The position numbers and the translations under genes are program-made. The notes under the pieces were generated by a model, which did not search any database, was not told where the DNA came from, and saw only the letters and a program-made list of their open reading frames with translations. Shown here piece after piece: positions 15,778 to 41,500 of a stretch of 64,000 nt of DNA; within the stretch, counting starts at the first letter, position 1; each line of letters opens with the position of its first letter. Location: contig NC_088798.1 of assembly GCF_011386835.1 (NCBI RefSeq), positions 108,934,001-108,998,000 of the forward strand, given 5' to 3'. Origin of the DNA: Chrysemys picta bellii (taxonomy: Eukaryota).

Positions 15778-15821
15778 TTCCCCACTTACCTCAGGGCTTT
15801 GGTCTCCTTCCCCCGGTGAAC

Positions 15822-21597: not shown

Positions 21598-21603
21598 TTT
21601 ATT
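21598..21603 (-). terminator. PolyA signal of B3
   Basis: AATAAA in the conserved context with a T-rich downstream element. Confidence 0.75.
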
Positions 21604-21701
21604 GCACAAACAGGTGGGGAGCGATGCTCTTAGCGGCCTGGAACTGGCGGATGAGACGAGAACGGGACTCCGTGCAGGGATCTGTTAGTGGGAACTAAAT
21701 G

Positions 21702-24700
21702 CTAAAGGTCATCTTTTTCCTTGGCCTCATCGTGCGACTTGCATTCTCCATAATGCTCAAAGCAAAGACTTCCAAGGTATTCACTGGAGGGAAAGACAGA
21801 GACACAGAACTCAGGGCTGCAACCTTATGGACAACGAGAGCAAAACATCTGTCAAGGCCCCAGTATGTGACATTAACCAGAGCTTATTTGCTGACAGGAA
21901 AAATTACACTGAGGAAGTCGACCCAGCCTCTAGGAGGTAAAGACATAGGCGCAGGCAGGGCCTAGAATTACCTCACAATTGTATTTTAGTTTTTGTTAAT
22001 GGGTCGTTTATTCTGTTACTTACTAGACTGCTTGGCAAAAGAAGCATTTGTTGCCATATGTCTGGCCATCAGTGCCACAAACAGGTTCATACTGCTCGGT
22101 GCAGAATTCTGGAGGCTCCTTGTACTCACTGCAGAAACCCTACAAAGAACATTAGTATTGCTATTAGAGTTATTGTCTGCATTTCAGTGGTGCCCCAACG
22201 CCCCACTTGCCTCTGAACAGAGAGGGAGGGACACTCCCTGCCCCTGGGAGCTCGCAGTACCTACTCCTGTCTCTTGTCTCCACTGACGTTCTGATGAACC
22301 GACTCCCCAATTCCCCTCTCGCTGTCAGGAGGAGCCGAGCCCGTCTCCCTGGTGTAAGAGATGTTTCTGAACCCACAGCACATGGTGTGTGAGCGAAGGG
22401 GCATCTCCGTAGGCATCAGATGCTAATCTGACATTACCCAGGGTACAAGCTGGACTGATGAACAGCTGTGTGCCCTTTTACACTGCTTTGCTAGGAAAGC
22501 AACCACTCCTATTCCTGCTCACCCACAGCCTCCAGCATGTAAATTACTCTGAGCTGTACGGCATGAGTGCTTTGGCCGGCCACTCTTGAATTACACTGCA
22601 GGGAAACACCAGCAAACTTCCAGTCCCAGACTCTCCCCCAGAAATGTGCGTCTTGTAGTGCCCAGCACCCTCCTGGACAATACAAGCTCATATAAAGTCT
22701 GTCATTTTATTAATAGAAAATGAAATGCACAAATCCTGTTGTTTCAAATGGAGTTTTCCAAACCCTTCAATCCAAACACACTGCTTTAGATAAAACAATA
22801 AAACAAGTTTCTTATCTACAGAAAGATAGATTTTAAGTGATTACAAGTAATGAGGCATCAAAGTCAGAATTGGCTACAAGAAAATAAAAGCAAAACGCCA
22901 CTAATGCCTGACTTATCAAGCTAAGTGAATTCAAAGCAAAAGGTCTCTTTCACCAAATGCTTCAGCAGTCTTACTGGGTGTCCTTTCCACCAGGACCCCT
23001 CCCCCAGTCCCGTGTTACTTTCCTTGTCCTTCAGGTATTGGTGATGTTGTGGGCAGAGAGAAAGGGAGGAGTAACTTGGGGCGTTTGTTCCCCATTCTTA
23101 TATTTTCCCCTCTTCTTTGAGCATCATCTACAGCTGGGATTCATGCGACAGAAAGTTTGTGGGGATGGGAACCTCCAGCTGTTCCTTTGCCAACAAGTAA
23201 ATTTCTCGCTCACAACTTTTTTCCTGCCAAAGAATGGCCATGTAACCATGTTAGGGTCACTTTGATTATGTTGAGACCTGGCTGAGGTGTGAGTTTGTCT
23301 TTTGTCTCTGGTTTATAGCTGTTTCCCCAGACTGGGAACATGTCTTATAGAGCAGAATCTTATAACTTTACATACAATGTTGCCTCACAGATTTAACAGG
23401 ACAATAATAATGTTCAGCACATGATGAGTGTTCAAAGATACCTCACAAGGCATACTTTCTAAAAAAGGTATCATAATCTTGTAAAAGGGGTGAACATAGG
23501 GGTACAGACTGTCACACCCTGGTCTAAGAGATGCTTCTGAACCTGCATCATATAGAATGTGAGTGAAAGAGAATCTCCACAGGCAGCAGATGCTCATAAA
23601 TCAAAAACCTCATGCTCTTGTCACACCGTCCCCTCCTCTGCTCTGTCTCAGTTGCTCCCTGTGTCTCCCCCAGGCCCATCACAGACGGACCTGTACAATA
23701 GCGTAGGGAATCCATCCCCCTGACCCCATGGCTTACGTCTACTCAGCAGTGAGACACCCCTGGCTAGCTCCGCTCAGCTGACGTGGGCTCGGGCTGTGCA
23801 ATTGCTGTGTAGACATTCGGGCTTGGGCTGGAGCCTGAGGTTTGGTACCCCACGAGGGGGGAGAGTCCCCGAGCCTGAACATCTACACAGCCATTTTGAG
23901 CCCTGCAGCCCACGCCCCCCAAGCTCGAGTCAGCTGATCCGGTCCAGCTATGGACGGGCCTTGGGTCTTTGTTCCAGTGTAGACATACCCATGGGTTCTC
24001 AGCCCCAGAGATTCACTCTCCCCTGGCTAGGGCACTGGGTACAGTCTACTTCTGCTCTGAGTCATCAGTTCTAGCGTGTTTCTAACCCAGAGATTGTGGT
24101 CCCTGTGATGCTACAAACCAGAGACTGGGGAAAGTGACTATTAATGAACAGGGAGAGTTCGACTTACCGTACCAGCCTGGCCAGCAGCATCTGGAACAAA
24201 ACATACAGACAGAATGAGACTCTTTCAGATTCTCTCTCCCATTCTGGTGCTGGGGTTATCCATGTCCCTAGTTCTGACCAAGTCTCTCTCTTTACTTCTA
24301 CTATCTTGGTGGGGGGATCACCTGCAGAGCCCGAGAGGGCCAGTGTGATGGTGTCTGCACAGAGAATGACCGACACTGTCTCCTGGCAACTGATGGCCTG
24401 GGCCCCTCCCCTGCACAGGTGCCAACTGAAGGTGTTGGAGAACAAAGAGATCAGGTGGCCTCCTGGCCTGGGAAAGAGACAAAGGCAGAGGAGGTGCTGG
24501 AGAGTTTCAGTTGGGAGCTGGCTGGGGAATTGGAGGGAGCCCCAGGACTGGGGTCTAAGCTCCCTGCCCCCCAGAAGGACCTGACTGAGGGGTCCTGGGT
24601 GTACCTACAAGCCCTGCTTGGAACTGTGTTCCTGTTGGCCAATAAACCTTCCGTTTTACTGGCTGGCTGAGAGTCCTGGTGCATCGCAGGAAGTGGGGGT

Positions 24701-26968
24701 GCAGGGCCCTGATTCCCCCACACTCCGTGACAGGAGGTGTCTCCTCTACAGGACCTCACCCTCGCCTTTGGGGCAGATGGGGAGTTTCCTACTTTTCCAG
24801 GAACTTCTGAGAAGATCTCAGTGCTATTTGTTTTAACCCTTCTCCTTCTGGATGAAGGGTAACGTATCTATCCACTCAATTCAGTGAAAGGCTTCAGAAA
24901 ATATTCATGCTGTCAACAAGACTTAATCATAAAAATGCAAAGAAATGTCTTTCTTTCTTTCTTTGGAGTTTCAGGGGGAACAGTTCACCCATGTAGTGGG
25001 ATCGTGGTTGTCTTAAGCCACCTATAATAAAACAATGCCCACATGATGGTCTCAACTTTTAGCTTCTGAAACACAGGCCTCTGCCATTTGAGCTGAAGAA
25101 ATAGCTGTTAGTCGCCACCTCCATAATACCCTGATGTTCTTTCAAAACTACACCCAGCCAACAGAGGCCAAAAAATGTCCATTGACATCAGTGGTAGCAG
25201 GATTAGACCCCAAACTATCCACAACAAAAGTGGTTAATGGCTTTGCTTTAAAACGCCTTTTATGGAGTTCTGCATTTCAGAGGCATTTCATACCACAGCC
25301 ACTTTTCTGTCATTCAGTTTTCCTATGCTGCTCTGGTGCTGGCCTCTGACATTGGACTCCAGTTTGTCTTTGTTGTTTCTTGATCTCTCTGTAAGTGTGA
25401 GGGGTTTCCTGGTTCTGCTTCTTGGTCCTGCTCATTAGGGGCTCTGATGGGAAACTTGTGATCTGGGTCTTCAGGAGTTAATTTTCAAAAAGCCAACCTA
25501 GAGCAACAGGGATTGAATTGTGCCTCGCTGCCTTCGGGAGCAGCCTGCTTTGTCTCTCTCTGTGTTTTGGGCTCTTGTACAATAAGGTTCTGGATTCTGA
25601 GAAATCATGTCGTATTATATTGCAAGGATACAGAAAGAGAGTTTTACATTTTACTCTAACATCCATTTGGATGGTATGAACATAACACTGCACACTCCGC
25701 CAGGTACCCCACAACAGGCTGTCTGGTCCATTCATTGACACTGCCTGAAAAATACCAGAACACTAAAGGTTGTGTCTCAGCAGCTGTTTTGCAGGATCCA
25801 GGATCTCACGGGCAGCCAATAAAACCTCAGCAGCTTTTGACTCTCTCTCTCTCTCTCTCTCCATTATTTGAGTGTCTCTTCCGAGTTAAGCCATAGCACA
25901 GAATTACATCAGCAATTACTCAATTCTAATGAGATGTTTCATTCGGAACAGGTCTGACTGTTTGTTAATGAACCTGTATCCAATTGACTAAGATATCAGC
26001 CCCACCAGTGAAGATTATCTGTATTAAGGAGCTATGGATAATGGGATCATTCAGCATTACAAGGTAGGGATTTAACCAAAAAAAGCAAGTGTTTGGAGAG
26101 GATCTAAATCTTCCAATTTCTCCTTTGGCAATGCCATAGAGCTTGTCATGCTAATAAAGTATCGTTGACTTGAATTAATTCAGGGCATGAAGCAACTCCT
26201 AAGTAATACAAGGTAAGAAGAAATTTTTGCTGTGGGAAGCTTCTCTCAGAACTGCCGAGGGCCTTGTACATGGCTCTAAATACACTGGCATAGGCTAGTG
26301 TTGGAAACAGAGATTGGGTAGCTGGGTGCCTGGTCTGATCCCGGGTGGGAATTTTTGACTCCTGATGGTAAGGTAACTGGATAAAAAGTGTGAAAAATCC
26401 GGACGGGAATGGGGGCTAATAGGCACCTATATAAGAAAAAGCCCCGAATATTGGGATTGTCCCTATAAAATCAGTACATTTGGTCACTGATGGCCTCTTT
26501 GTGGAGTTTCATAATAAACAATGACAGGAATTAAAAGTATTTAAACAACTAGATCAAGAATTTTACTGCCAACCACCTCAACCTCAACAAAATAATCAGA
26601 AAACAATGAGAACCGTAGACGAGAAGAAATTCAAAAAGAAAGGGGATTCCATGGATGTTTGGTTTCTAGGGGTGAATCTTTAGAGCTGCCTCAGTTTCTG
26701 GCAGAGTCAGTGATATCCCAGCTCAGAGAGAACCCCGGGAACAGCCCTTCCGAGCTCTGGGATCCGTGCAGGGAGGTTAGAGCTCCTGGAATCAGCCACT
26801 GTGGGGATGTGTGAATCCCTGTATAGATCAGAGTGAGGCTGGCCCCGACCTTTCAGGGGGCAGAGGTATCAGAGCAGGGCTCAGCACAGGTTACAGCAAA
26901 AGTGACTCACCTGAGTAGAAGCAGCAAAGTGCCAGAGCGAAGAGCAGAACGGCCCCTGTTATCTTCAT
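21702..26968 (-). CDS. Kazal-type serine protease inhibitor B3, 92 aa, P1=Glu, C-terminal KDDL
   Basis: Exons 26911-26968, 24168-24190, 22024-22139 and 21702-21783. Protein [92 protein letters not shown]. Confidence 0.93.
22428..23517. mobile_element. LTR-like insertion in B3 intron 2
   Basis: About 1.1 kb, ends TGTCACA, shared with B4 (39248-40334) and absent from the type A genes and B6. Confidence 0.6.
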
Positions 26969-27045
26969 GGCGGACGTGGCTGTCTGGTCTGCACTGGGCT
27001 CTTGGTGCTCCGCTCCCTCAGTAAACCCCACAGACAGAGCCCCAC

Positions 27046-27053
27046 TATATATA
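27046..27053 (-). promoter_or_regulatory. TATA box of B3
   Basis: TATATATA about 78 nt upstream of the ATG, conserved in B4 and B6. Confidence 0.75.
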
Positions 27054-28230
27054 GGGTGTCGGAGAACCCACCTTCATTGTGACATCATCCTAAATAGTCA
27101 CTCACAACTCCGGCAACCGGAAGCAAAGCTCTTGAGGGGAATGTGAAACTGTAAACAATGTTTCCTCCTCAACAAGATTCCAGGATAAGTTGAAGGAGGT
27201 TACAAGTCACATCCTTGATTTGGTGAATAATGGCGTAGTTATGTGGGTTGAGTGCTCACCATGGGGACATGGGCACCCAAACCTGGACATGCCTGTTTGT
27301 CATGACTGCGAGTGCAGAACATATTGCTCATGCTGCACGTTAAAGGCACTGACCCAACAGAGCACCTGACATTTACCGTGTTACCAGCCTCTTTCAGCCA
27401 GACTCTGCAGTAGGTCCCAGCAGCAGGGGGCAAAGCTGACCGTAAGCGACTGCCATGCTGTCCTGATCTTGCAAGTATTCTGCCCGGAGCCGGTGCCTGG
27501 CTTAGTTTAGAGGCGCTAGAGGGCAGGTCTAACTCATTCCACTGGCCTGTGACCCCAAGAAGCCGTTTCCAATGTCGTGAGATTCCAGGATCTTGGTTCT
27601 GTCCCTTTCCCCGGCTGTGCGCCCTGCGGCAGCTGCAGTGATGGGGTGACCCAGGAGTTGATTTGACACCTGGAGATCCCCGTGCACAGGTTTAGCCCAG
27701 TGTTGACTTGGGGCCCAGCCCTGCACGGTGCTGGGCGCCCTCGCAAGGAGCTGAGAGCTATTTTGGACCAAACCAATCAGCACGGCACCGATCCCAGTCA
27801 GAGGGACGCCACAGTCCCCGGTGCCCCCTGGAGGAGATGGACGGAGTGAGCAGCTCATGGGTCTCTGGGTCGTGGGGTATTGGGAGAAACGAAGCTGGGC
27901 AGGGGATGGCGCACAATGTGGATCCACATGGCCACACATGCTCCATGAGGAAAAAGAAGGACAAGCCATGTACACCTCCCTCGCCGAAAAGGAGGCCTGG
28001 GCCCTGTGTCTGGGTTGGAGAGCTGTCACGGGGTCCCTGGTGTGCTGAGGAGACTAGCGGTTAGCGTCCACTCCCTCGTGGGGCAGTGCCAGAGGAGCCC
28101 TGGTGCGCTCACTCCACCGGGCTCCGACCCAGGGACCCAGGAATGGCAGCAGCGTATGGCCTCCAGGAGGGGCCCTCGGAGCTACCTTGCCTGGGTCATT
28201 CCTACCACTGCTTCCCTCCCTCAACATCTA

Positions 28231-29125
28231 GTCATAGAATACCAGGGTTAGAAGGGACCTCAGGAGATCATCTAGTCCAACCCCCTGCTCAAAGCAGGAC
28301 CAATCCCAACTAAATCATCCCAGCCAGGGCTTTGTCAAGCCTGACCTTAAAAACCTCTAAGGAAGGAGATTCCACCACCTCCCTAGGGAACCCATTCCAG
28401 TGCTTCACCACCCTCCTAGGGATATAGTGTTTCCTAATATCCAACCTAGACCTCCCCCACTGCAACTTGAGACCATTACTCCTTGTTCTGTCACCTGGTA
28501 CCACTGAGAACAGCCGAGCTCCATCCTCTTTGGAACTCCCCTTCAGGTAGTTGAAAGCAGCTATCAAATCCCCCCCTCATTCTTCTCTTCTACAGACTAA
28601 ATAAGCCCAGTTCCCTCAGCCTCTCCTCATAAGTCATGTGCCGCAGCTCCCTGATCATTTTCGTTGCCCTCTCCTGGATTCTCTCCAATTTGTCCACATC
28701 CTCTCTGTAATGTGGGGCCTAAAACTCAACGTAATACTCCAGATGTGGCCTCACCAGTGCTGAATAGAGGGGAATAATCACTTCCCTCAATCTGCTAGCA
28801 ATGCTTCTATTAATGCAGCCCAATATGCCGTTAGCCTTCTTGGCAACAAGGGCACATTGCTGACTCATATCCAGCTTCTTGTCCACTGTAATTCCCAAGT
28901 CCTTTTCTGCAGAACTGCTGCTTAGCCAGTCAGTCTTTAGTCTGTAGCGGTACATGGGATTCTTCCATCCTAAGTGCAGGACTCTGCACTTGTCCTCGTT
29001 GAACCTCATCAGATTTATTTTAGCCCAATCTTCCAATTTGTCTAGGTCACTCTGGACCCTATCCCTGCCCTGCAGCATATCTACCTCTCCCCTCAGCTTA
29101 GTGTCATCCGCGAACTTGCTGAGAA
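28231..29125 (-). mobile_element. 5'-truncated CR1
   Basis: RT C-terminal translations (ORFs 28719-29078 and 28310-28567) and a CR1 tail. Confidence 0.9.
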
Positions 29126-29355
29126 AAACAAGGAGTCCAGTGGCACCTTAAAGACTAACAGATTTACTTGGGCATAAGCTTTTGTGGGTAAAAAAACCCC
29201 ACTTCTTCAGATGCATGGAGTGAAAATTACAGATGCAGACATAAATATACTGACACATGAAGAGAAGGGAGTTACCTTACAAGTGGAGAACCAGTGTTAA
29301 TAGGGCCAATTAATCAGGGTGGATGTGGCCCACTCCCAATGATTGATGAGGATGT

Positions 29356-30464
29356 TGTGACGCTCTGTACCTCGGGGGAACACCCTACACCCCCATGTTT
29401 ATCTTCATAAAACGATTGTGTGGTGTCCAATGCAAAGTTTATCATGTCGGATGTCTGCGGAAGGCTCATGATGCACTGAGCATGGTTGTTATAGGGATGT
29501 TATAGTCATTGTTACAGTGATGTTATAGGTTATAATTTCATGTACATAGTTATGAGGCTGAAAAATGTGTCCTCATGGCTTAAAGCAAGCCCAGGCAGAA
29601 ACTCTCCAGGAGCAGAGAGGCAGCTCACACCTCGTCAGGGCATGGATGGGACAAACCCAGCCCAGCCCCACAGGAACAATGGACACTGGCTCATGCAGCA
29701 ACAAAAGAACCTGTTAGTCCCTGGAGGGAGTCACCCCCTTCCTTGGGGCAGTTTGGGACTGGGATGAGGTAATGCTCACCTGACGCTGAAGGTGGGGGGC
29801 AAAGCCAAGAGGAAAGAAAGGACATGATAAAAGGGGGAGATGTTTGTCCTGCTCTTCCTCTCTCTCTTCCTCCTACATCTACAGACACCACCACCAAGCG
29901 ACTGAAGCTCTGATCAAAAGGGGAGAGCCTGGCTGAAGAGCAGCCAGCTGGTGGTGAGAAGCATCTAAGTTTGTAAGGACATGGAAAGTGTTACGATCAG
30001 CTTAGAATGTGTTTTGCATTTATTTCATTTTACCAAATCTGACTTGTTCTGCTTTGACTTATAATCATGTAAATCTACCTCTATAGTTAATAAATCTGTT
30101 TGTTTGTTCTACCTGAAGCAGTGCGTTTGGTTTGCAGTGTGTCAGAGACTCCCCTTGGGAGAACAAGCCTGGTACATATCAATTTCTTTGTTAAATTGAC
30201 GAACTCATATAAGCTTGCAGCGTCGAGTGGGCATAACTAGACACTGCAAGACGGAGCTTCCCAGGGTTGTGTCTGGAACTGGAAATATTGGCTAGTGTCA
30301 TTCGCTTGCAAGTAGCTAGGAGCAGTTTATGCCAGAGGCCGTGTGTGAACAGCCCAGGAGAGGGGGTTCTCACAGCAGAGCAGGGTAAGGCTGGTTCCCA
30401 GAGTCAAGGATTGGAGTGACCGAGCAGATCCCTGGGCCGGATAACACCAGAGGGGATCGTCACA
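29356..30464. mobile_element. Solo LTR inserted in the Penelope 3' pseudo-LTR
   Basis: TGTGACG...CGTCACA inverted termini; 5-bp flanks GATGT and GAGGT; internal AATAAA. Confidence 0.85.
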
Positions 30465-30592
30465 GAGGTGTCAATACCAAGAGAGGGAAAATTGCTTTTG
30501 TAGTGAGCCAGCCACTCCCAGTCCCTATTCAAGCCCAAATTAATGGTGTTAAATTTGCAGATGAATTATAGCTCTGCCGTTTCTGTTTGAAG

Positions 30593-30813
30593 TCTGTAAA
30601 AAGCAACAAAGAGTCCTGTGGCACCTTAGAGACTAACAGACATATTGGAGTATAAGCTTTCGTGGGTGAATACCCACTTCATCAGATGCATCTGACGAAG
30701 TGGGTATTCACCCACGAAAGCTTATGCTCCAATACGTCTGTTAGTCTATAAGGTGCCACAGGACTCTGTGTCACTTTTTACAGATCCAGACTAACACGGC
30801 TACCCCTCTGATC
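30593..30813. mobile_element. Short palindromic Penelope-derived insert
   Basis: Inverted repeat 30593-30784 with arms of about 96 bp; TTTGAAGTCTGT is duplicated at 30586-30597 and 30814-30825. Confidence 0.85.
30688..30727 (+). ncRNA. Minimal type I hammerhead ribozyme motif (Penelope-associated)
   Basis: GCAT-CTGACGA-A-GTGGGT ATTC ACCCAC-GAAA-GC-TT-ATGC. The core, stem II, palindromic AGCT stem III and stem I (GCAT/ATGC) are intact. A mirror copy lies on the minus strand at 30650-30689. Confidence 0.75.
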
Positions 30814-31208
30814 TTTGAAGTCTGTTTTTGAAGTTTTTTTGTTAAAATATGGCTACTTTTAAATCTGTTATTGAAGGTCCAGGGAGATTGAAGTGGCTTT
30901 TGTATGTTACCATTCCTGATGTCTGATTTGTGTCCATTTATTCTTTTACTTAAAGACTGTCCGGTTTGGCCAATGTACATGGCAGAGGGGCATTGCTGGC
31001 ACATGATGGCATATATCACATTGGTAGAAGTGCAGGTGAATGAACCCCTGATGGTGTCGCTAGAGTAGATATGGAGACAGAGTAGGCAATGAGGTTTGCT
31101 ACAGGGATTGGTTTCTGGGTTAGTGTTTCTGTGGTTTGTAGTTGCTGGTGAATATTTGCTTCAGGTTGGGGGGCTGTCTGTAAGTGAGGACTGGCCTGCC
31201 TCCCCAGG

Positions 31209-31693: not shown

Positions 31694-34227
31694 TGTGAGA
31701 GTGAGGGATTATTTTCCAGAATAGGTTGTAGATCGTTGATGTGCTGGAGAGGTTTTAGCTGGGGGCTGTACATGATACCCAGTGGTGTTCTGTTATTTTC
31801 CTTGTTGGGCCTGGCCTGTACTAGGTGACTTCTGGGTATCCATCTCGCTCTGTCAATCTGTTTCCTCATTTCACCAGGTGGGTATTTTAGTTTTAAGAAT
31901 GTTTGATAAAGATCTTGTAGGTGTTTGTCTCTGTCTGAGGGGTTGGAGCAAATTCGGTTGTATCTTAGGGCTTGGCTGTAGACAATGGATCGTGTGATGT
32001 GTCTTGGATGGAAGCTGGAGGCATGTAGGTACGTATAACGGTCAGTAGGTTTCCGGTATAGGGTGGTGTTTATGTGACCATCACTTATTTTCACTGGGTT
32101 GTGAAATCCAGAAAGTGGATCTCTTGTGTGGACTGGTCCAGGCTGAGGTTGATGGTGGGGTGGAAATTATTGAAGTCCAGGTGGAATTCTTCAAGGGCCT
32201 CCTTTCCGTGGGTCCATATGATGAAGATGTCATCAATGTAGCGCAAGTAGAGGAGGGGCACTAGGGGACGAGAGCTGAGGAAACGTTATTCTAAGTCAGC
32301 CATAAAAATGTTGGCATACTGTGGGGCCATGCGGGTACCCATAGCAGTGCCACTGACTTGAAGGTATAAGTTGTCCCCAAATCTGAAGTGGTTGTGGGTG
32401 AGGACAAAGTCACAAAGCTCAGCCACCAGGTGTGCTGTGGCCTCATCAGGGATACTGTTCCTGACAGCTTGTAGTCCATCCTCATGTGGAATATTGGTAT
32501 AAAGTGCTTCTACATCCATGGTGGCCAGGATGGTGTTTTCAGGAAGAACATCAATGCATTGTAGTTTCCTCAGGAAGTCGGTGGTGTCTCGAAGATAACT
32601 GGGAGTGCTGGTAGCGTAGGGTCTGAGGAGAGAGTCCAAATAGCCAGATAATCCTGCTGTAAGAGTGCCAATGCCTGAGATGATGGGGCGTCCAGGGTTT
32701 CCGGGTTTATGGCTCTCGGGTAGCAGATAGAATACCCCTGGTCGGGGCTCTGGGAGGGTGTTGGTGTAGATTTGTTCCTGAGTTTCTTGAGCAGATGGTG
32801 TAGTTTCTTTTGGTATTCCTCAGTGGGATCAGAGGATAGTGGCCTGTAGAATGTGGTCTTGGAGAGTTGCCTGGCAGCTTCCTGTTCATAATTCGACCTG
32901 TTCATTATGACTACAGCACCTCCTTTGTCAGCCCCTTTGAATATAATGTCAGAGTTGTTTCTGAGGCTGTGGATGGCATTGCGTTCTGTACGGCTGAGGT
33001 TATGGGACAAGTGATGTTGTTTGTTCACAATTTCAGCCTGTGCACGTCTGCGGAAACACTCTATGTAGAGGTCCAGTCTGTCATTTCGACCGTCAGGAGG
33101 AGTCCACGCAGAATTCTTCTTCTTGTAGGGTTGGTAGGAGGGTTCCTGTGGGTCAGTGCACTGTTCAGTGATGTGTTGAAAATATTCCTTGAGTCGGAGA
33201 CAACGAAAGTAGGCTTCCACATCACCGCAGAACTGTATCATGTGCGTGGGGGAGGTGGGGCAGAAAGAGAGTCCCCGAGATAGGACAGACTCTTCCGCCG
33301 GGCTAAGTGTGTGGTTGGCTAGATTAATAATATTGTTGGGTGAGTTAAGGGTACTACTGTTGTAGCCCCCTGTGGCATGTAGGAGTTTAGATAGTTTACT
33401 GTCCTTCTTCCTCTGTAGAGAAGTGAAGTGTGTGTTGTAAATGGCTTGTCTTGTTTTTGTAAAGTCCAGCCACGTGGAAGTTTGTGTGGAAGGCTGGTAT
33501 TGTGTGAGAGTCTCCAGTTCTGAGAGCTCAGTCTTGATCTTCTCCTGTTTGCTGTACTGACTGCTGATCAGGTGGTTTCTCAGTTTCCATTTCCATTTCA
33601 TACGGCTAAATTCAGTGCCTTGCATGGTGTCAAGTATCAGGGGGAGCCGTGTTAGTCTGGATCCACAAAAACGAGGAGTCCAGGGGCACCTTAAAGACTA
33701 ACAGATTTATTTGGGCATAAGCTTTTATGGGTAAAAAGCCAACTTCTTCAGATGCATGGAGTGAAAATTACAGATACAGGCACAAATATACTGACACATG
33801 AAGAGAAGGGAGTTACCTCACAAATGGAGAACCAGTGTTGACAAGGCCAAATCAGTCAGGGTGGATGTGGTCCACTCCCAATAATTGATGAGGAGGTGTC
33901 AATACCAAGAGAGGGAAAATTGCTTTTGTAGTGAGCCAGCCACTCCCAGTCCCTGTTCAAGCCCAAATTAATGGTGCTAAGTTTGCAAATGAATTGTAAC
34001 TCTGCAGTTTCTTGGAAGTCTGTTTTTGAATTTTGTTTGTTGAAGGATGGCTACTTTTAAATCTGTTATTGAATGTTCAGGGAGATTGAAGTGTTGTCCT
34101 GTTGGTTTTTGTATGTTACTATTCCTGATGTCTGATTTGTGTCCCTTTATTCTTATTAATTATTATTATTAGCATTTATTAACAGACTTCAAAGAGAAAC
34201 TGCAGAGCTACAATTCATTTGCAAATG

Positions 34228-34977
34228 TTGAATATGTTAATGGGCACAGGGCGAGCTCCCTCAGGCAGCCCCGAGCTACGGCAGCGGATAGGTCTGGTGG
34301 GATCCAGGGGAGCGGGACGAGCAGAGGCTGTGCTGCATGGGGCAGGAAGGCAGCACAGATCCCATGCGGAGGGACCCCTGCACCCCTTGTGCACCAGGGA
34401 GATCATGGCTGGGGTAGGGTACAGGTCTCTGCCGCGGGGATCGGGAGGGATGTGGGATCGCTGTGGGCTATGGCACAGTGGGGCTGTACATGGCCCCAGT
34501 GCTGCTGGGGGGAAGTGGTGGGATGTTCCCTTCTCCGCTCCCAAACGCAGGAGCAGCTGTGCACTGGGTAACTGTCTGGGGGCGCCGGGCTCTGCTTCTG
34601 GGCTGGGGATTCCTCCTCCCCTCTGCCCCAGGCAAAGCCCTTGAACTCTGGCTTCGCTCTTGGCTCCAGGACTTGCACCATTGAAAATATGGGTATGAAT
34701 CTGCTGACTCGTCACTGGGCCCTGTGACAGCCCAGGTCAGTGCCTGGCTGGTTCAGAGCCCCATAGTCCCTCCAGCACAGGGCCTGTGGTCGGGGGAGAA
34801 GGTCGCCTACAGCCCCTTTCATCTCTGTACAGCAATGCTGGGAGTTGCTGAATCCTGCAATAATCAACAACAAATACCCCTGGAAAATATAGGTGAGTGC
34901 TACTTAGTATTATCATTATTAAGCATAGTAATATCGGGTCGGGTGGGGGGAGTCTCAGAGTCGGAGAGGAGATGGGC
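34228..34977. repeat. Orphan copy of the type A upstream flank, with no adjacent gene
   Basis: Closely similar to 17293-18030 and 48030-48602. Confidence 0.85.
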
Positions 34978-35146
34978 ATGCAAACAATAACGGGGAAGAC
35001 GTGGTGGCCCAGGCTTCAGCAGGGCTAGCAACATGAGGACGTCTTAATGGGTGAGGAGCCATGTCCCTCTCCCTTCAGAGTTCAGATTTAAGCTCACAAT
35101 CTCCTTGCAATTCACCATGCTTAAAGTCTGACTTTAACATAAGAAC

Positions 35147-37870
35147 GGCCACACTGGGTCAGACCAAAGATCCATCTGGCCCAGTATCCTGTCTGCCGAC
35201 AGCGGCCAATACCAGGTGCCCCAGCAGGAATGAACAGAACAGGGAATCATCAAGTGATCCATCCCCTGTCGCCCATTCCCAGCTGCTGGCAAACAGAGGC
35301 TAGGGACACCATCCCTGCCCAGCCTGGCTAATAGCCATTGATGGACCTATCCTCCATGAATTTATCTAGTTCTTTTTTGAACCCTGTTATAGTCTTGGCC
35401 GTCACTACATCCTCTGGCAAGGAGTTCCACAGGTTGACTGTGTCTTGTGTGAAAAAATATTTCCTTTTGTTTGTTTTAAACCTGCTGCCTATTAATTTCA
35501 TTTGGTGACCTCTAGTTTTTGTGTTATGAGGAGTAAATAACACTTCCTTAATTACTTTCTCCATACCAATCTTGATTTTATAGACCTCTATCATATCCTC
35601 CCTTAGTTGTCTTTTTTCCAAGCTGAAAAGTCCCAGTCTTATTAATCGCTCCTCATATGGCAGATGCTCCATACCCCTAATCATTTTGTTGCCCTTTTCT
35701 GAACCTTTTCCAAGTCCAATGTATCTTTTTTGAGATCAGGCGATCACATCTGCACACAGTATTCAAGATGTGGGCATACCATGGATTCATATAGAAGCAA
35801 TATAATATATAAGCACTTTAAAAACCTGTCACTTTTTAGCGGTCTCCCATTGCATGATGTAATTAAATGAGACTTTTTCTCATTTGACTGTTTCTCATCA
35901 GATCCTACCTGTATTTTATCATCATCTTCCATCTTCTCCTCCTTACTAGGACATAGACAATCTCCATTAGCAGATCCTCCCCTAAGGGATGTCTCTGTCC
36001 GAACCACGGGCTCCTCCGCACCTGTGGGCTTTCCCCCAGCCCTTAGTTTTAAAACGGCTCTAAAACCTTTTTAATGTTAAGTGGTAGCAATCTGGCTCCA
36101 TTTGGTTTAGCATTTCAGAGAATGCTACCATGGTCCTGGACTTACCTAATAGCCTAAATTTGGCCTCCAGGACCTCTCTCCTATCCCTCCCTCTTTCACT
36201 GGTACCTACATGTACCACAACCCCTGGCTCCTCCCCAGCACTACACATAAGCCTGTCTATATGTCTCGAGAGATCCGCAACCTTCTCACCAGGCAGGCAA
36301 GTCACCATGCGGTTCTCCCGGTCATCGCAAACCCAGCTATCCATAAAAAGCAACAGAGTCCTGTGGCACCTTAAAGACTAACGGATGTATTGGCCTGCGT
36401 CTGACGCAGTGGGCATTCACCCACGAAAGCTTATGCTCCAATACATCTGTTAGTCTTTAAGGTGCCACAGGACTCTTTGTTGCTTTTTACAGATCCAGAC
36501 TAACACGGCTACCCCTGATACCAGCTATCTATGTTTCTAATGATCGAAGCTCCCATTACTAATACCTGTCTCTTCCGAATAACTGGAGTTCGCTCCCCTG
36601 GAGAGGTATCATCAGTGCGAGGGGATACATACCATGAGATCGTCTGGAAGGAGGGTCCCAACTGTGGGATTGTTTCCCTCTGCTCCAGTTGGATGTTCTC
36701 CTTCCCTGAGACTTTCATCCTCCTCAACAGCACAGAGGCTGTCAGACCAGGGGTGGGACCATTCTACTGTGTCCCGGAAAGTCTCATCTGTGTCCCTCTC
36801 TGTCTCCCTTAGCGCCTCTAGCTCAGTCACCCTGGTCTCCAAAGCCCGTACACGGTCTCTGAGGGCCAGGGGCTCCTTGCACCGAGTGCACACATACGTC
36901 ACCCGCCCACAGGGCAGGTAATCAGACATGCTGCATTGGGTGCAATAAACTGGATAGCCCCCTGTAAGAGGATCCGGACTCACCCCTGCAGCGCCTCCTG
37001 CTGGTCGTCCAGGGAATTCGCTCACCAGTCTCTGGAGCGCCCTCTGCAGGCCGGTGATCCGCCTTGTCCTCTGCACTGGCCCCCGTGTCCCTCCCAGGAC
37101 CCCGGTGCCCCTTGCCCTGGGTGCTGCCCCCTGGCAATACCCACACACGCTGGTTCTTCCCTCCCAGGGGAACCTCCACCCACTAACCCCACCTCACCTC
37201 AGGATAAGGCCACTGCCAGTCACCAACTAGCCCCCACGCTCTGGGGCAGACTGCAGTATAGGCCACTCATCATCAGCAAGGTTGGGTTTGGACCTGCTGC
37301 CTTGGCCTAGCCCTGGGCTGCCCTCTGCAACCCCCAATACCCCTTGGCCTATTACCAGGCCACAGCCTGGGGCTATCCAGGCTGGAGCTCCCCAGCTCCT
37401 CAGCCTTTCCCCAGCCCTGCTCCACTACAGGTACCCTGTCTAGCTCCCTACAGCCAGCCCCTTCTCTCCCTGAAGGCAGAGAGAGACTCGTGGGCTCCTG
37501 GCTCCCAGCCTCTTTATCCAGGCCAGCTGGGGCCTGATTGGGGCGTGGCCCTGCCGTGGCTACTTCCCCAATCAGCCCAGCTTTTAGAGCTGCAGACCTC
37601 TGCCAGGGCTGTTTTAAACCCCTCAGGCGGGAGCGGGGTAACCACCCCGCTACACCCCCACTCTGTTGCTGGACTGCTGCCTGCATTCTCCTTTTACTCC
37701 TAAAGCTTGTTCCTTTCTTGAGGTTTTGTTTGTATCAGGGGGTGTTTTGGGTTTAAGTTTAAAGGAGTTTAAGGAATGTAACGTGTATCTATCCCCCCAC
37801 ACTCCCACTCCCCCTGTAAATTCCCTCGCTAAGCTCCCCTGTTAGCCGCTCCTGTTCGCTAGCTCGAGTC
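35147..37870 (-). mobile_element. Internally deleted CR1 with a nested Penelope piece (about 36343-36520) and a solo LTR
   Basis: ORF1 start MQAAVQQQSGG|YPVYCTQC is split by the LTR; RT C-terminus at 35328-35684. The 5' UTR end is also present at 19070-19212. Confidence 0.8.
36963..37654. mobile_element. Solo LTR
   Basis: TGTAA...CTACA with CCCCC on both sides; same family as 43772-44460. Confidence 0.8.
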
Positions 37871-38411
37871 ATTTCGGGGTGCCCCTTTGTACCAACCTCC
37901 CCGTTCTTTGTCTCTGGCGTCTCCCCGCTCCCAGACGCTCCCGAGTCACTGGGACAGGGCGCTGGCTTACAGCAAGCATCAGCATGGTCAGAGATCGGTC
38001 AGGCTCCCCCAGGGCAGCCCAGAAGTGAGGCAGCTTCCAAGCACGTGAAGAGCCAAATGTGGCAGGTTGCTGGTCTGCTGCACAGGGCATCAGCGCAGCT
38101 CGGACCCCAGTCAGAGGGACTCCGCAGTCCCCTGTGTGCCATGGAGGAGACGGACAGACTGTGCAGCTCGTGGGTCTCTGGGATACGGGGGGCTGTATTA
38201 GAAGGATCAAGGGTTTGTTGGTGTGTAGGGTGTGGCGCACGGCACGGATCCACATTCCCACAAGCCCTTTACACCTCCTACCCCGACAAGTAGCCCTGGG
38301 CCTTATATACCACCCCTCCAATCCCTTTGTTTTCTCCCAGGCACGGGAGAGCAGAGTCCCTCCTTGGAAAGGGGAAAAAACCACAGAGGTAACGAATTCT
38401 GCTGAGTTTGC

Positions 38412-38417
38412 TTTATT
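38412..38417 (-). terminator. PolyA signal of B4
   Basis: AATAAA in the conserved context. Confidence 0.75.
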
Positions 38418-38520
38418 GCACAGACAGGTGGGGAGTCAGCGATGCTGTCAGGAGCCCTGCAAATGGAGGATGAGACGAGACTGTGGCTCCATGCAGGGAT
38501 CTGCTGGTGGGAACTAAATG

Positions 38521-41500
38521 CTAAAGGTCTTCTCTTTCCTTGGCCTCGTCTTGCGACTTGCATTCTCCATAATGCGCAAAGCAAAGACTTCCAAGGTATT
38601 CACTGGAGGGAAAGACAGAGACACAGAACTCAGGGCTGCAATCCTTATGGACAGTGAGAGCAAAGCATTTGTCAAGGCCCCAGTATGTGACATTAACCAG
38701 AGCTTATTGGCTGACAGGAAAAATTACACTGAGATAGTCGACCCAGCCTCTAGGAGGTAAAGACACAGACGCAGGCAGGGCCTTGAATTACCTCACAATT
38801 GTATTTTAGTTTTTGTTAATGGGCCGTTTATTCTGATACTTACTAGACTGATGAACAAAAGTCACATTTGTTGCCATATGTCTGGCCATCAGTGCCACAG
38901 ATAGGGTTGTATTCCCTGGTGCAGCCTTTCGGAGGCTCCTTGTACTCACTGCAGAAACCCTACAAAGAACATTAGTGTTGCTATTAGAGTTATTGTCTGC
39001 ATTTCAGTGGTGCCCCAACGCCCCACTTGCCTCTGAACAGAGAGGGAGGGACACTCCCTGCCCCTGGGAGCTCGCAGTACCTACTCCTGTCCCTTGTCTC
39101 CACTGACGTTCTGATGAACCGACTCCCCAATTCCCCTCTCTCTGTCAGGAGGAGCCGAGCCTGTCTCCCTGGTGTAAGAGATGTTTCTGAACCCACAGCA
39201 CATGGTGTGTGAGCGAAGGGGCATCTCCGTAGGCATCAGATGCTAATCTGACATTACCCAGGGTACAAGCTGGACTGATGAACAGCTGTGGGCCCTTTTA
39301 CACTGCTTTGCTAGGAAAGCAACCACTCCTGTTCCTGCTCACCCACAGCCTCCAGCATGTAAATTACTCTGAGCTGTACGGCATGAGTGCTTTGGCCGGC
39401 CACTCTTGAATTACACTGCAGGGAAACACCAGCAAACTTCCAGTCCCAGACTCTCTCCCAGAAATGTGTGTCTTGTAGTGCCCAGCACCCTCCTGGACAA
39501 TACAAGCTCATATAAAGTCTGTCATTTTATTAATAGAAAATGAAATGCACAAATCCTGTTGTCTCAAATGGAGTTTTCCAAACACTTCAATCCAAACACA
39601 CTGCTTTAGATAAAACAATAAAACAAGTTTCTTATCTACAGAAAGATAGATTTTAAGTGATTACAAGTAACGAGGCATCAAAGTCAGAATTGGGTACAAG
39701 AAAATAAAAGCAAAACACCACTAATGCTTGACTTATCAAGCTAAGTGAATTCAAAGCAAAAGGTCTCTTTCACCAAATGCTTCAGCAGTCTTACTGGGTG
39801 TCCTTTCCACCAGGACCCCTCCCCCAGTCCCATGTTACTTTCCTTGTCCTTCAGGTGTTGGTTTTGTCGTGGGCAGAGAGAAAGGGAGGAGTAACTTGGG
39901 GCGTTTGTTCCCCATTCTTATATTTCCCCCTCTTCTTTGAGCATCATCTCCAGCTGGGATTCATGCGACAGAAAGTTTGTGGGGATGGGAACCTCCAGCT
40001 GTTCCTTTGCCAACAAGTAACTTTCTTGCTCACAACTTTTTACCTGCCAAAGAATGGCCACATAACCACATGATGGTCCATTTGATTATGTTGAGACCGG
40101 GCTGAGGCATCAGTTTGTCTTTTGTCTCTCATTTATGGCTGTTCTCCCAGACTGGGTACATGTCTTATAGAGTAGAATCTTATAACTTTACATACAATGT
40201 TGCCTCACATACTTAACAGGACAATAATGTTCAGCACATTATGAGTTTTCAAATGATACCTCACAAGGCATTCTTTGTACAAAATTTATCATAGTCTTGT
40301 AAAAGGGATGAATATAGGGGTACATACTGTCATACCCGGTCTAAGAGATGCTTCTGAACCCGCATCGTATAGAGTGTGAGTGAAAGAGCATCTCCACAGG
40401 CAGCAGATGTTCAAATATAAAAACCCTCATGGGGGAGGGTCCCAGAGCCCGAACATCTACACAGCCATTTTTAGCCTGCAGCCCACGCCCCCCAAGCTCA
40501 AGTCAGCTGATCCGGTCCAGCCCTGGACGGGCCCTGGGTCTTTGTTCCAGTGTAGACGTACCCATGGGTTCTCAGCCCCAGAAATTCACTCTCCGCTGGC
40601 TAGGGCACTGGGTACAGTCTACTTCTGCTCTGAGTCATGTGCTTTCATAGGTTTCTAACCAGAAATCTCTAAAACCAGAGATTGGGGAAAGTGACTATTA
40701 ATGAACAGGGAGAGTTCGACTTACCTTACCAGCCTGGCCAGCAGCATCTGGAACAAAACAGAATGAGATTGTTTCAGATTCTCTCTCCCATCCTCGTGCT
40801 GGGGTTATTGATGTCCCTAGTTCTGACCAAGTCTTTCTCTTTACTTTTATACAGAGCCTTTTCAAATGTTCTGGTACGGGGTTGTGCCACTAGGGATGTC
40901 AACTCTTGTACCACCTGTATTCACTGAATTGAGATCACAAAGGAGGAACGGGCAAACATTCTTGGTGCTTTCCATAGTGATCCTATTCTAGGCAGGTGTC
41001 TCCTCTACAGGACCTCACCCTCGCCTTTGGGGGAGGTGGGGAGTTTCCTACTTTTCCAGGAACTTCTGAGAAGATCTCAGTGCTATTTGTTTTAACCCTT
41101 CTCCTTCTGGATGAAGGGTAACATTGTATCTACTCATTAAATTCAGTGAAAGGGTTCAGAAAACATTCATGTTGTCAGCAAGACAATCATAAAAATGCAA
41201 AGAAATGTCTTTTTTCTTTCTTTAGAGTTTCATGGTCGATCAGTTCAACCATATAGCGGGATCATGGCTGTGTTAAGCCACCCATAATAAAACAACATCC
41301 ACAGGTTGATCACATCTTTAGCTTTTGAAACACAGGCCCCTGCCATTTGAGCTGAAGAAATCGCTCTGTTAGCTGCCATAATACTCTGATGTTCTTTCAA
41401 AACTACACCCAGCCAACAGAGGCCAAAAAATGTCCATTGACACCAGTGGTAGCAGGATTAGACCCCAAACTATCCACAACAAAAGTGGTTAATGGCTTTG

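What the first reader, a model, noticed from the sequence alone, without database searches (positions are those of the whole stretch)
21702..38602. Two paralogs gained an acidic tail ending KDDL or REDL: possible ER-retrieved Kazal inhibitors
Seen: B3 ends [15 protein letters not shown] (21702-21783) and B4 ends [15 protein letters not shown] (38521-38602). A2, A5, B6 and the relic all stop right after the last Cys, so the tail is derived. Its first 21 nt align without gaps to the stop codon and 3' UTR of type A at only about half of the positions, while the UTR further on is strongly conserved. The B3/B4 changes in the last four residues are conservative (K/R, D/E). Established: REDL is the processed C-terminus of Pseudomonas exotoxin A that binds the KDEL receptor, and ERp57 ends in QEDL. 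Inference: a normally secreted inhibitor family recruited 3' UTR sequence to make ER/Golgi-retained versions, for example to block premature zymogen activation. Neither ending matches the strict xxEL consensus.
Basis: partly seen in the sequence, partly recalled or inferred. Interest (0 to 1): 0.82.

Follow-up and report, generated by a model that had tools for sequence, protein, structure and literature searches.

The report
Turtle Kazal inhibitors with KDEL-like tails
Two painted-turtle genes for small secreted-type protease inhibitors carry a 12-residue tail ending KDDL or REDL, and because every major turtle lineage keeps this [K/R]-x-[D/E]-L ending, it probably holds the inhibitors back in the endoplasmic reticulum, which has not been described for this inhibitor family.

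Summary
On the minus strand, B3 (stop at 21702-21704) and B4 (stop at 38521-38523) read 12 codons past the last Kazal cysteine and end KDDL and REDL. A2, A5, B6 and the copy left of the window stop at TGA right after that Cys.

My gene models equal the RefSeq 'ovomucoid-like' proteins of Chrysemys picta bellii. Spliced contigs from four studies join exon 3 to this last exon of B3 and run through the tail to the poly(A) signal.

The tail does not drift freely:
- 38 of 43 tail-bearing turtle proteins (18 of 21 distinct tails) end [K/R/V]-x-[D/E]-L.
- These cover both turtle suborders (Cryptodira and Pleurodira).
- Endings seen are REDL, KEDL, REEL, RNEL, RDDL, KDDL, K/RGDL and KVEEL.
- The tail is nevertheless the fastest-diverging stretch of the last exon.
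- No non-turtle Kazal protein sampled had such an end.

REDL, KEDL and RNEL are experimentally validated human ER-retrieval signals. KDDL is weak in reporter assays.

Best reading (about 0.6): an old, turtle-specific subfamily of Kazal inhibitors retrieved by the KDEL receptor, probably leakily. ER localisation itself is untested, and the complex prediction gave no verdict. Earlier scan notes cover this same window only.

The parts
26911..26968 (-). B3 exon 1, coding part: ATG plus signal peptide [19 protein letters not shown], then the first base of a split codon. Donor GTGAGT.
   Evidence: scan. The spliced model equals RefSeq-derived P0026. Not covered by the RNA contigs laid.
24168..24190 (-). 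B3 exon 2, a 23-nt micro-exon encoding (D)AAGQAGT.
   Evidence: The exon 2-exon 3 joint 22138|24167 was seen in contigs of runs X2 and X3.
22024..22139 (-). B3 exon 3: Kazal core [38 protein letters not shown]. The reactive-site P1 residue is Glu.
   Evidence: Aligns to ovomucoid third domain.
21741..21783 (-). B3 exon 4, Kazal C-terminal part: (Y)[14 protein letters not shown]. It holds the seventh Cys and the last Kazal Cys.
   Evidence: The joint 21783|22024 (GT..AG on the minus strand) was seen in all four runs laid.
21705..21740 (-). B3 tail [12 protein letters not shown]: 12 codons ending in the KDEL-like tetrapeptide KDDL.
   Evidence: The X1 contig is identical to the window across it.
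21702..21704 (-). B3 stop codon TAG, 6 nt before the conserved UTR block TAGTTCCCAC.
21586..21701 (-). B3 3' UTR with AATAAA at 21603-21598. RNA contigs end at 21586-21621.
43252..43309 (-). B4 exon 1, coding part: signal peptide [19 protein letters not shown].
   Evidence: The model equals P0019.
40725..40747 (-). B4 exon 2, micro-exon encoding (D)AAGQAGK.
38844..38959 (-). B4 exon 3: Kazal core. The reactive-site P1 residue is Arg.
38560..38602 (-). B4 exon 4, Kazal C-terminal part: (Y)[14 protein letters not shown].
38524..38559 (-). B4 tail [12 protein letters not shown], ending REDL.
38521..38523 (-). B4 stop codon TAG. AATAAA follows at 38417-38412.
49927..49972 (-). B6 last coding exon, a tail-less comparator: ...[11 protein letters not shown] followed directly by TGA.
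9889..9934 (-). A2 last coding exon, a tail-less comparator: ...[11 protein letters not shown] followed directly by TGA.
45404..45449 (-). A5 last coding exon, a tail-less comparator: ...[11 protein letters not shown] followed directly by TGA.

Best explanation
B3 and B4 belong to an old, turtle-specific subfamily of single-domain, ovomucoid-like (SPINK6/12-like) Kazal serine-protease inhibitors.

Proposed mechanism:
1. A signal peptide takes the protein into the ER (shown by sequence).
2. The Kazal domain folds there.
3. The last exon was extended into former 3' UTR, adding a 12-residue charged tail that ends [K/R]-x-[D/E]-L.
4. The tail offers its free C-terminal carboxylate and acidic side chains to KDEL receptors in the ERGIC and cis-Golgi (inferred).
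5. The receptors return the inhibitor to the ER in COPI vesicles.

Most copies have Asp rather than Glu at position -2. B3's KDDL is a weak signal in reporter assays. Retention is therefore probably partial or saturable, as for CRELD2 (REDL) and MANF (RTDL), so some protein may still be secreted, for example under ER stress.

The purpose is speculative. One option is to keep an inhibitor of trypsin-like (B4, P1 Arg) or Glu-specific (B3, P1 Glu) proteases in the early secretory pathway, against premature protease activity. Another is to hold it as a releasable store.
For: 1. The tail ORFs are in the DNA as reported.

2. Gene models and transcripts.
- The spliced models equal P0026 and P0019, RefSeq 'ovomucoid-like' proteins of Chrysemys picta bellii.
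- Contigs from 4 runs, 4 studies and 2 organisms carry the exon 3-exon 4 joint 21783|22024. They continue through the tail to just past AATAAA, with no intron cover.

3. Conservation of the ending.
- 43 tail-bearing turtle proteins give 21 distinct tails, and 18 of these end [DE]L.
- Position -1 is L in 18 of 18.
- Position -2 is D in 12 and E in 6.
- Position -3 is E, D, G or N.
- Position -4 is R in 11, K in 4 and V in 3.
- The genera are Chrysemys, Trachemys, Mauremys, Chelonoidis, Gopherus, Chelydra, Caretta, Lepidochelys, Eretmochelys, Chelonia, Dermochelys, Carettochelys, Pelodiscus and the pleurodire Emydura.

4. DNA-level pattern.
- The stop is TAG at the same place in all 14 tail genes seen as DNA, the -2 codon is always GAn and Leu is CTT or CTG.
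- Between deep lineages the tail is the most diverged stretch. Its first part is 42-71% identical, against 83-91% for the adjacent coding part and 84-86% for the UTR.
- A simple simulation gives 0.14-0.32 per lineage for keeping [DE]-L-stop at UTR-like divergence. At tail-like divergence it gives 0.006-0.055.

5. Match to the known signal.
- The pattern fits the receptor's specificity: a selective -4 residue plus a tri-carboxylate with Glu or Asp at -2 and -3 (PMC8248988).
- REDL (GPX7, lost to the Golgi when the motif is deleted), KEDL and RNEL are validated on human proteins. AKDDL gives partial ER localisation (PMC2140024).
- CRELD2 REDL gives retention with stress-induced secretion (PMC10018036).

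6. The receptor is present and intact.
- The genome has three KDEL-receptor genes.
- Turtle KDELR1 keeps R5, R47, Y48, E117, W120, R159, Y162, W166 and R169.

7. The ending is specific to this subfamily.
- Among 149 top Kazal representatives, and among about 100 single or double-domain hits from birds, squamates and mammals, only turtle proteins end this way. One unidentified metagenomic protein ends HSEL.
- A natural plain stop-loss (Pelodiscus P0323, GEC-RFLGAQR) shows what an unselected read-through of this UTR looks like.
Against: - No localisation or binding data exist.
- Neither KDDL nor REDL fits the strict PROSITE pattern [KRHQSA]-[DENQ]-E-L. Glu is strongly preferred at -2, and KDDL was only weakly effective in the reporter.
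- The K/RGDL and KVEEL endings are untested.
- Raykhel et al. also found that QEDL and NEDL placed a reporter mainly in the Golgi or in a mixed ER-Golgi pattern.
- Turtles evolve slowly and paralogs may exchange sequence, so the many identical endings are not independent. The conservative, UTR-rate estimate of chance retention over three deep lineages is only about 0.03.
- The hypervariable reactive site (P1 = E, R, L, M) is what is expected of extracellular arms-race inhibitors, not of ER housekeeping proteins.
- A few models lack the motif (P0010, P0011/46/331, P0022).
- Expression of B4 itself was not verified by laid reads. Fewer RNA-like runs hold it.
- Exon 1 was not covered by RNA contigs.
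- The complex prediction gave no verdict.
Confidence: 0.6

Rival explanations
1. The tail is functional and under selection but does not act through KDEL receptors. A short acidic C-terminal extension could modulate inhibitor-protease contacts, solubility, or calcium or mineral binding. It could instead be a docking or sorting motif for another partner. Some copies read RGD or KGD (Chelydra RGDL, Mauremys and Chelonoidis KGDL), which resemble integrin-binding motifs.
For: - Length and stop position are conserved, and Lys at -6 is conserved as well. This shows constraint beyond the last four residues.
- Asp, not the preferred Glu, dominates at -2.
- RGDL and KGDL variants occur.
- The hypervariable P1 fits an extracellular role.
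Against: - The residues that are kept are exactly those the KDEL receptor reads: a free C-terminal Leu, an acid at -2 and a base at -4. The position it tolerates, -3, is the one that varies.
- RGD or KGD occurs in only a minority of copies.
- No other known motif class requires [K/R]-x-[D/E]-L at the very C-terminus of a lumenal protein.
Confidence: 0.2
2. The tail is a neutral by-product. A stop-loss read-through into the 3' UTR persists because turtles evolve slowly and the paralogs homogenise each other. On this view the KDEL-like ending is coincidence.
For: - Between B3 and B4 the tail shows 3 replacements and 1 silent change in 39 nt, which alone gives no sign of purifying selection.
- Stop-loss at this site does occur (P0323).
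- A Chelonoidis copy appears to have lost the TAG and reads on (P0011).
- At UTR-like rates, chance retention per lineage is 0.14-0.32.
Against: - The tail persists with the same length and stop in both turtle suborders and in softshells.
- Its upstream residues are largely replaced, yet the ending stays in the motif class.
- Changes in the last three codons are synonymous or D/E only.
- The creation of the tail needed several coordinated changes.
- Two discrete 3' states with no intermediates coexist in interleaved arrays.
Confidence: 0.1
3. The motif acts outside the producing cell. A secreted inhibitor would use its KDEL-like end to bind KDEL receptors on other cells, either at the surface or after uptake. 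It would then travel retrogradely, as MANF and some bacterial toxins do.
For: - REDL is the functional end of processed Pseudomonas exotoxin A, and RTDL-bearing MANF interacts with KDEL receptors.
- A weak motif would allow secretion.
Against: No evidence for secretion, uptake or a target cell was found. This reading is less parsimonious than simple retrieval in the producing cell.
Confidence: 0.05

Closest known systems
Ovomucoid third domain (OMTKY3, OMSVP3) and single-domain SPINK inhibitors (SPINK6/9/12, SPINK1)
   Same: - Pfam Kazal_1 and Kazal_2 hits.
- The six-Cys pattern and the C-T-P1-E-Y reactive loop.
- The intron inside the domain after ...AV, the short second exon and a signal peptide ending ...DAAG.
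- The best solved match is ovomucoid, at E 4e-30 to 1e-15.
   Different: - All of these end at or within a few residues of the last Cys and are secreted.
- The turtle B3/B4 type adds 12 residues ending [K/R]-x-[D/E]-L.
- The whole turtle family, with or without tail, also has a seventh Cys where ovomucoid has Thr.
Soluble ER proteins with xEDL or xxDL retrieval signals: GPX7 (REDL), GPX8-like (KEDL), CRELD2 (REDL/HEDL), MESD (REDL), ERp57 (QEDL), MANF (RTDL), calreticulin-3 (RNEL)
   Same: The C-terminal tetrapeptides are identical or near-identical. B4 and many orthologs end REDL, Emydura KEDL and Carettochelys RNEL. All have an N-terminal signal peptide and an acidic run before the motif.
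   Different: Those are oxidoreductases, chaperones or growth-factor-like proteins with shown ER residence. Here the carrier is a canonical protease-inhibitor domain with a hypervariable reactive site, and localisation is untested.
HSP47 / SERPINH1 (ends RDEL), recalled from memory and not tested here
   Same: It is a member of a secreted protease-inhibitor superfamily that became an ER resident through a KDEL-type C-terminus.
   Different: HSP47 is a serpin that lost inhibitory function and works as a collagen chaperone. The turtle proteins keep an apparently intact Kazal reactive loop.
Pseudomonas exotoxin A C-terminus (REDLK, processed to REDL)
   Same: It has the same tetrapeptide as B4, known to engage KDEL receptors.
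   Different: It is a bacterial toxin that uses the receptor for retrograde entry. It has no homology and a different biological direction.

Membership tests
Kazal-type serine protease inhibitor (Pfam PF00050/PF07648; PROSITE Kazal pattern) | Significant match to the Kazal profile HMMs | tested here: met
   PF07648 and PF00050 are precomputed for P0001-P0012 and for all cluster members identical to the B3 and B4 models. phmmer to ovomucoid chains gives E 4e-30 to 1e-15.
Kazal-type serine protease inhibitor (Pfam PF00050/PF07648; PROSITE Kazal pattern) | Cysteine spacing C-x(5-10)-C-x(6)-Y-x(3)-C-x(2,3)-C plus a final Cys, six Cys for three disulfides | tested here: met
   A regex scan finds it in B3, B4, B6 and A2. 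The final Cys is in exon 4. A seventh Cys is additional.
Kazal-type serine protease inhibitor (Pfam PF00050/PF07648; PROSITE Kazal pattern) | Inhibitory activity against a serine protease | not testable with these tools
   The reactive loop C-T-P1-E/Q-Y is intact by alignment to OMTKY3. Activity is unmeasured.
KDEL-type ER retrieval signal (PROSITE ER_TARGET [KRHQSA]-[DENQ]-E-L at the C-terminus) | N-terminal signal peptide, so that the protein is lumenal | tested here: met
   [20 protein letters not shown] sits at the start of exon 1 and is identical in annotated turtle orthologs. It resembles the ovomucoid leader ...DAAFG (from memory). No dedicated signal-peptide predictor was available.
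KDEL-type ER retrieval signal (PROSITE ER_TARGET [KRHQSA]-[DENQ]-E-L at the C-terminus) | Motif at the extreme C-terminus with a free carboxylate | tested here: met
   TAG follows the Leu codon directly in B3, B4 and all 14 tail genes seen as DNA. RNA contigs carry this exon.
KDEL-type ER retrieval signal (PROSITE ER_TARGET [KRHQSA]-[DENQ]-E-L at the C-terminus) | Strict PROSITE tetrapeptide with Glu at -2 | tested here: not met
   B3 KDDL and B4 REDL have Asp at -2. The orthologs REEL (Chelonia) and RNEL (Carettochelys) do meet it.
KDEL-type ER retrieval signal (PROSITE ER_TARGET [KRHQSA]-[DENQ]-E-L at the C-terminus) | Tetrapeptide among the experimentally validated extended set (Raykhel et al. 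2007) | tested here: inconclusive
   REDL is validated: GPX7 is in the ER and moves to the Golgi when the motif is deleted, and REDL binds ERD21 and ERD23 but not ERD22. KEDL and RNEL are also validated. AKDDL gives only partial ER localisation, in more than 20% of cells. KGDL, RGDL, RDDL and VEEL are not reported there.
KDEL-type ER retrieval signal (PROSITE ER_TARGET [KRHQSA]-[DENQ]-E-L at the C-terminus) | Binding to a KDEL receptor and steady-state ER localisation | not testable with these tools
   The complex prediction of turtle KDELR1 (residues 1-201) with B4 (residues 28-92) scored 0.23, below the 0.34 mark. That is no verdict either way.

The most novel reading that the evidence does not exclude
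Turtles have maintained, since before the Cryptodira-Pleurodira split, a dedicated clade of ER-resident or conditionally released Kazal protease inhibitors. The clade arose by turning 3' UTR into a KDEL-like tail. It would be the first Kazal inhibitors working inside the early secretory pathway. Their diversifying reactive sites imply a variable set of protease targets met in the ER or Golgi, or a stress-gated secretion mechanism for inhibitors.
Probability: 0.45. Interest if true: 0.72.

Novelty: new variant of a known kind. Interest (0 to 1): 0.62.

Why it matters
Kazal inhibitors are the textbook secreted protease inhibitors, for example ovomucoid and SPINK1. KDEL-type retrieval is the textbook way to keep soluble proteins in the ER. 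I found no report combining the two.

If the tails work, several things follow:
- Turtles offer a natural experiment in re-targeting a secreted inhibitor to the early secretory pathway by exonising UTR.
- Tail-bearing and tail-less paralogs sit side by side in the same tandem array, which is ideal for comparison.
- The natural variants (REDL, KEDL, REEL, RNEL, RDDL, KDDL, K/RGDL, KVEEL) form a series for probing how positions -2, -3 and -4 tune KDEL-receptor retention against release.
- The finding bears on how cells guard against premature protease activity, the role SPINK1 plays in the pancreas.

The claim can be tested directly with a simple secretion and localisation assay.

Tried and rejected
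- Complex prediction. Turtle KDELR1 (P0050, residues 1-201) with B4 (P0019, residues 28-92) scored 0.23, under the 0.34 mark, and the controls were not run. This is no evidence either way.
- Structure prediction. The job for B3 with alignment A2 (ticket) had not returned after more than ten collection attempts (through). Disorder or exposure of the tail and of the seventh Cys is therefore not modelled.
- Whole-library HMM search. The top 150 hits were swamped by multi-Kazal proteins, so it only showed that KDEL-like ends are rare among them.
- Gene tree with the tail columns removed. With 80 columns the B-type genes are unresolved. It shows only that A-type is a separate clade and that the tail label needs at least 3 changes. 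It cannot order gain and loss.
- RNA for B4. Only three small RNA-like runs hold part of its last exon, and the single read-laying run had already gone to B3. B4 expression therefore rests on the RefSeq model alone.
- RNA cover of exon 1. No contig covered B3 exon 1.
- Literature. Searches for turtle ovomucoid-like or Kazal proteins, and for Kazal with KDEL, gave nothing specific.
- Mis-annotation or a different last exon. I considered and rejected this for B3, because of the spliced contigs in four studies.

Full report
**What is in the window**

The window is vertebrate DNA. It holds turtle-type SINEs and a LINE with endonuclease and reverse-transcriptase domains. It lies at about 108.9 Mb on a chromosome-scale contig of a 2.37-Gb genome.

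On the minus strand it carries a tandem array of four-exon genes for single-domain Kazal inhibitors:
- Exon 1 encodes the signal peptide. The B type reads [19 protein letters not shown] and the A type [14 protein letters not shown]....
- Exon 2 is a 23-nt micro-exon.
- Exon 3 encodes the Kazal core.
- Exon 4 encodes ...LGSLCFxxxGxC.

The exon layout and the ...DAAG end of the leader resemble chicken ovomucoid (from memory). The closest solved structures are ovomucoid third domains, and their alignment stops exactly at the last Cys, residue 80.

**Checking the observation**

B3 and B4 continue past that Cys:
- B3 reads [12 protein letters not shown] then TAG (tail 21740-21705, stop 21704-21702).
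- B4 reads [12 protein letters not shown] then TAG (tail 38559-38524, stop 38523-38521).

A2, A5, B6 and the copy just left of the window have TGC TGA. Only six last-exon copies exist in the genome, and only B3 and B4 carry the tail.

In the alignment of last exons, identity between B3 and the tail-less copies varies sharply along the exon:

| Stretch | Identity |
|---|---|
| First 21 nt of the tail against stop and UTR | 8-9 of 21 |
| Whole tail plus stop (one 9-nt gap) | 17-19 of 39 |
| Coding part just upstream | 84-87% |
| UTR downstream | 83-84% |

**Are the genes and the stop real?**

My spliced B3 and B4 models are identical to P0026 and P0019. These are RefSeq 'ovomucoid-like' proteins of Chrysemys picta bellii, which also identifies the genome.

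I laid contigs of four small runs, from four studies and two organisms, on the B3 gene:
- All four show the joint 21783|22024, a GT..AG intron on the minus strand.
- None covers the intron.
- All continue through the tail ORF to 21586-21621, just past the AATAAA at 21603-21598.
- The contig of run X1 is identical to the window.
- Runs X2 and X3 also show the exon 2-exon 3 joint.

So B3 mRNA uses this last exon and this stop.

Two gaps remain. Exon 1 was not covered.

**Do orthologous tails drift?**

They do not, and this is the main result. Homology searches and cluster look-ups returned 43 tail-bearing proteins from 14 turtle genera. They include softshells (Pelodiscus), Carettochelys and the pleurodire Emydura.

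Of 21 distinct tails, 18 end in [D/E]-L. The endings are KDDL, RDDL, REDL, KEDL, REEL, RNEL, KGDL, RGDL and KVEEL.

| Position | Residues among the 18 tails |
|---|---|
| -1 | L in 18 |
| -2 | D in 12, E in 6 |
| -3 | E, D, G or N |
| -4 | R in 11, K in 4, V in 3 (V only in softshells, which have K at -5) |

The three exceptional endings look like alternative models or decaying copies. For example, one Chelonoidis model reads on into the conserved UTR block.

DNA from seven genera adds the following:
- The stop is always TAG, 6 nt before the conserved block TAGTTCCCAC.
- The -2 codon is always GAn.
- Leu is CTT, or CTG in Pelodiscus.
- The Chelydra array interleaves four tail genes with at least nine tail-less ones.
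- Only two discrete 3' states occur, with no intermediates.

Between deep lineages the tail is the least conserved stretch. Its first part is 42-71% identical to Chrysemys B4, against 83-91% for the neighbouring coding part and 84-86% for the UTR. The sequence has turned over while the ending stayed in one class.

A simple substitution simulation gives the chance of keeping [DE]-L-stop in place per lineage:
- 0.14-0.32 at UTR-like divergence
- 0.006-0.055 at tail-like divergence

Over three deep lineages this is roughly 0.03 down to about 1e-5. These are rough figures. The lineages are not fully independent and the UTR itself may be constrained.

Pelodiscus P0323 ends GEC-RFLGAQR. This is a plain read-through of the tail-less UTR to its second in-frame TGA. 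It is a natural example of an unselected extension and looks nothing like the B3/B4 tail.

**Origin of the tail**

The evidence for a derived state is as follows:
- A-type genes form a well-supported separate clade (99/99).
- A-type genes share the TGA-plus-UTR state with B6-like genes.
- All sampled non-turtle Kazal proteins end at or near the last Cys.

The tail is therefore the derived state, and it is positionally homologous to UTR. Its origin needed more than a stop loss:
- All three bases of the TGA differ from AAG.
- Nine nucleotides containing a second in-frame TGA are absent.
- The TAG sits where the tail-less UTR has TTG.

The event predates the split of living turtles, since both suborders have the tail. 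The tree is too short to order later losses.

**Does the ending fit the KDEL system?**

Raykhel et al. (PMC2140024) report the following:
- REDL (GPX7), KEDL and RNEL occur on human proteins that are ER-localised.
- GPX7 moves to the Golgi when the motif is removed.
- REDL binds ERD21 and ERD23 but not ERD22.
- Position -3 tolerates almost anything.
- Position -2 strongly prefers Glu, and AKDDL gives only partial ER localisation.

Gerondopoulos et al. (PMC8248988) describe the signal in two parts. One is a selective -4 residue. The other is a tri-carboxylate that needs Glu or Asp at -2 and -3 together with the free C-terminus.

CRELD2 (REDL or HEDL) is retained but is released under ER stress (PMC10018036).

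The turtle pattern mirrors this code. Leu is invariant, -2 is always acidic, -4 is mostly basic and -3 is free.

The genome encodes three KDEL receptors. Turtle KDELR1 keeps every signal-contacting residue named in that study.

An attempt to dock B4 on KDELR1 gave no verdict.

**Conclusion**

The most likely reading (about 0.6) is a turtle-specific, ancient subfamily of Kazal inhibitors retrieved to the ER by KDEL receptors. Retention strength probably differs among paralogs. REDL, REEL and KEDL are likely stronger, KDDL and RDDL weaker, and K/RGDL and KVEEL unknown. Release is possibly conditional.

| | Status |
|---|---|
| The tail and its transcription (B3) | shown |
| Its age | shown |
| Class-level conservation of the ending | shown |
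| Fit to published receptor specificity | shown |
| Receptor binding | inferred |
| ER residence | inferred |
| Physiological purpose | inferred |

The reactive-site residue P1 varies (Glu in B3, Arg in B4, and Leu, Met or Glu in orthologs). This fits classic Kazal hypervariability and sits oddly with a housekeeping ER role. It keeps the rival readings alive: a selected tail with another function, or action on other cells.

The genes themselves are already annotated. I found no description of the tail as a candidate retrieval signal on a Kazal inhibitor in the paper library. I therefore rate it a new variant of a known kind, of moderate to fairly high interest, and directly testable.

Noticed in passing
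window 21753-21755 (B3) and 38572-38574 (B4), minus strand; the same position in A2, A5 and B6: Every copy, with or without tail, has a seventh cysteine in ...GSLCF..., where ovomucoid third domain has Thr (TLTLSH). The mature domain therefore has an odd number of Cys, which allows a free thiol, a dimer or thiol-mediated retention. It is conserved across all turtle A and B proteins seen, except Mauremys mutica P0029 (GSLSF).
   Followed up: partly
window 22024-22139, 38844-38959, 50212-50327, 11163-11278, 45886-46001 (minus strand): The reactive-site P1 residue differs in nearly every paralog: B3 Glu, B4 Arg, B6 Glu, A2 Leu, A5 Arg. It also differs between orthologs (Leu, Met, Arg, Glu). In the RNA contigs of organism B, exon 3 has 9-11 differences from the window while exon 4 has 0-1.
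   Followed up: partly
window 24191-24308 (minus strand), upstream of B3 exon 2: One RNA contig (run X3) joins exon 3 to exon 2 but then runs on 118 nt upstream of exon 2 instead of splicing to exon 1. Mauremys models P0004, P0027 and P0031 have a 35-residue insert ending ...LILSVCFVP at this point. That matches the translated sequence just upstream of exon 2 and suggests an alternative upstream acceptor or intron retention. In B3 that frame holds a TGA 13 codons upstream.
   Followed up: partly
window 13336-16829 (minus strand): An apparently intact LINE lies between A2 and B3. It has an 813-aa ORF with endonuclease and reverse-transcriptase domains, and an upstream 335-aa ORF with a GDSL esterase-like domain. 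Further RT and endonuclease fragments lie at 4964-5677 and 8555-9487.
   Followed up: partly
window 538-560 and 1135-1192 (minus strand); L006 (genome C8:108933541-108933600): The leftmost copy is cut by the window edge rather than obviously dead. Its exons 1 and 2 lie in the window. Its exon 3 ([37 protein letters not shown]) and exon 4 (...ANLGSLCFKQEGEC, then TGA) lie just outside and look intact.
   Followed up: partly
L021 (Chelydra serpentina), 7397-79639: This is a large interleaved tandem array with four tail-bearing genes (RGDL and three RDDL) and at least nine tail-less genes. Two tail genes, at 46354 and 58168, have identical last exons, which suggests recent segmental duplication.
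   Followed up: no
P0323 (Pelodiscus sinensis XP_014425669.1): It ends GEC-RFLGAQR. This looks like a plain loss of the first TGA with read-through of the tail-less UTR to its second in-frame TGA. It serves as a natural control for an extension without a KDEL-like end.
   Followed up: partly
P0039 (Chelydra); P0020, P0023 and P0350 (Mauremys, Chelonoidis): Some tails end RGDL or KGDL and so contain RGD or KGD, which are integrin-binding tripeptides in other proteins. This is probably coincidental variation at the tolerant -3 position.
   Followed up: no
P0406 (metagenomic contig, 120 aa): An unidentified non-turtle Kazal-domain protein ends ...HGKCEANKKQHSEL. It was the only other sampled Kazal protein with an acidic-Leu C-terminus. 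Its origin is unknown.
   Followed up: no
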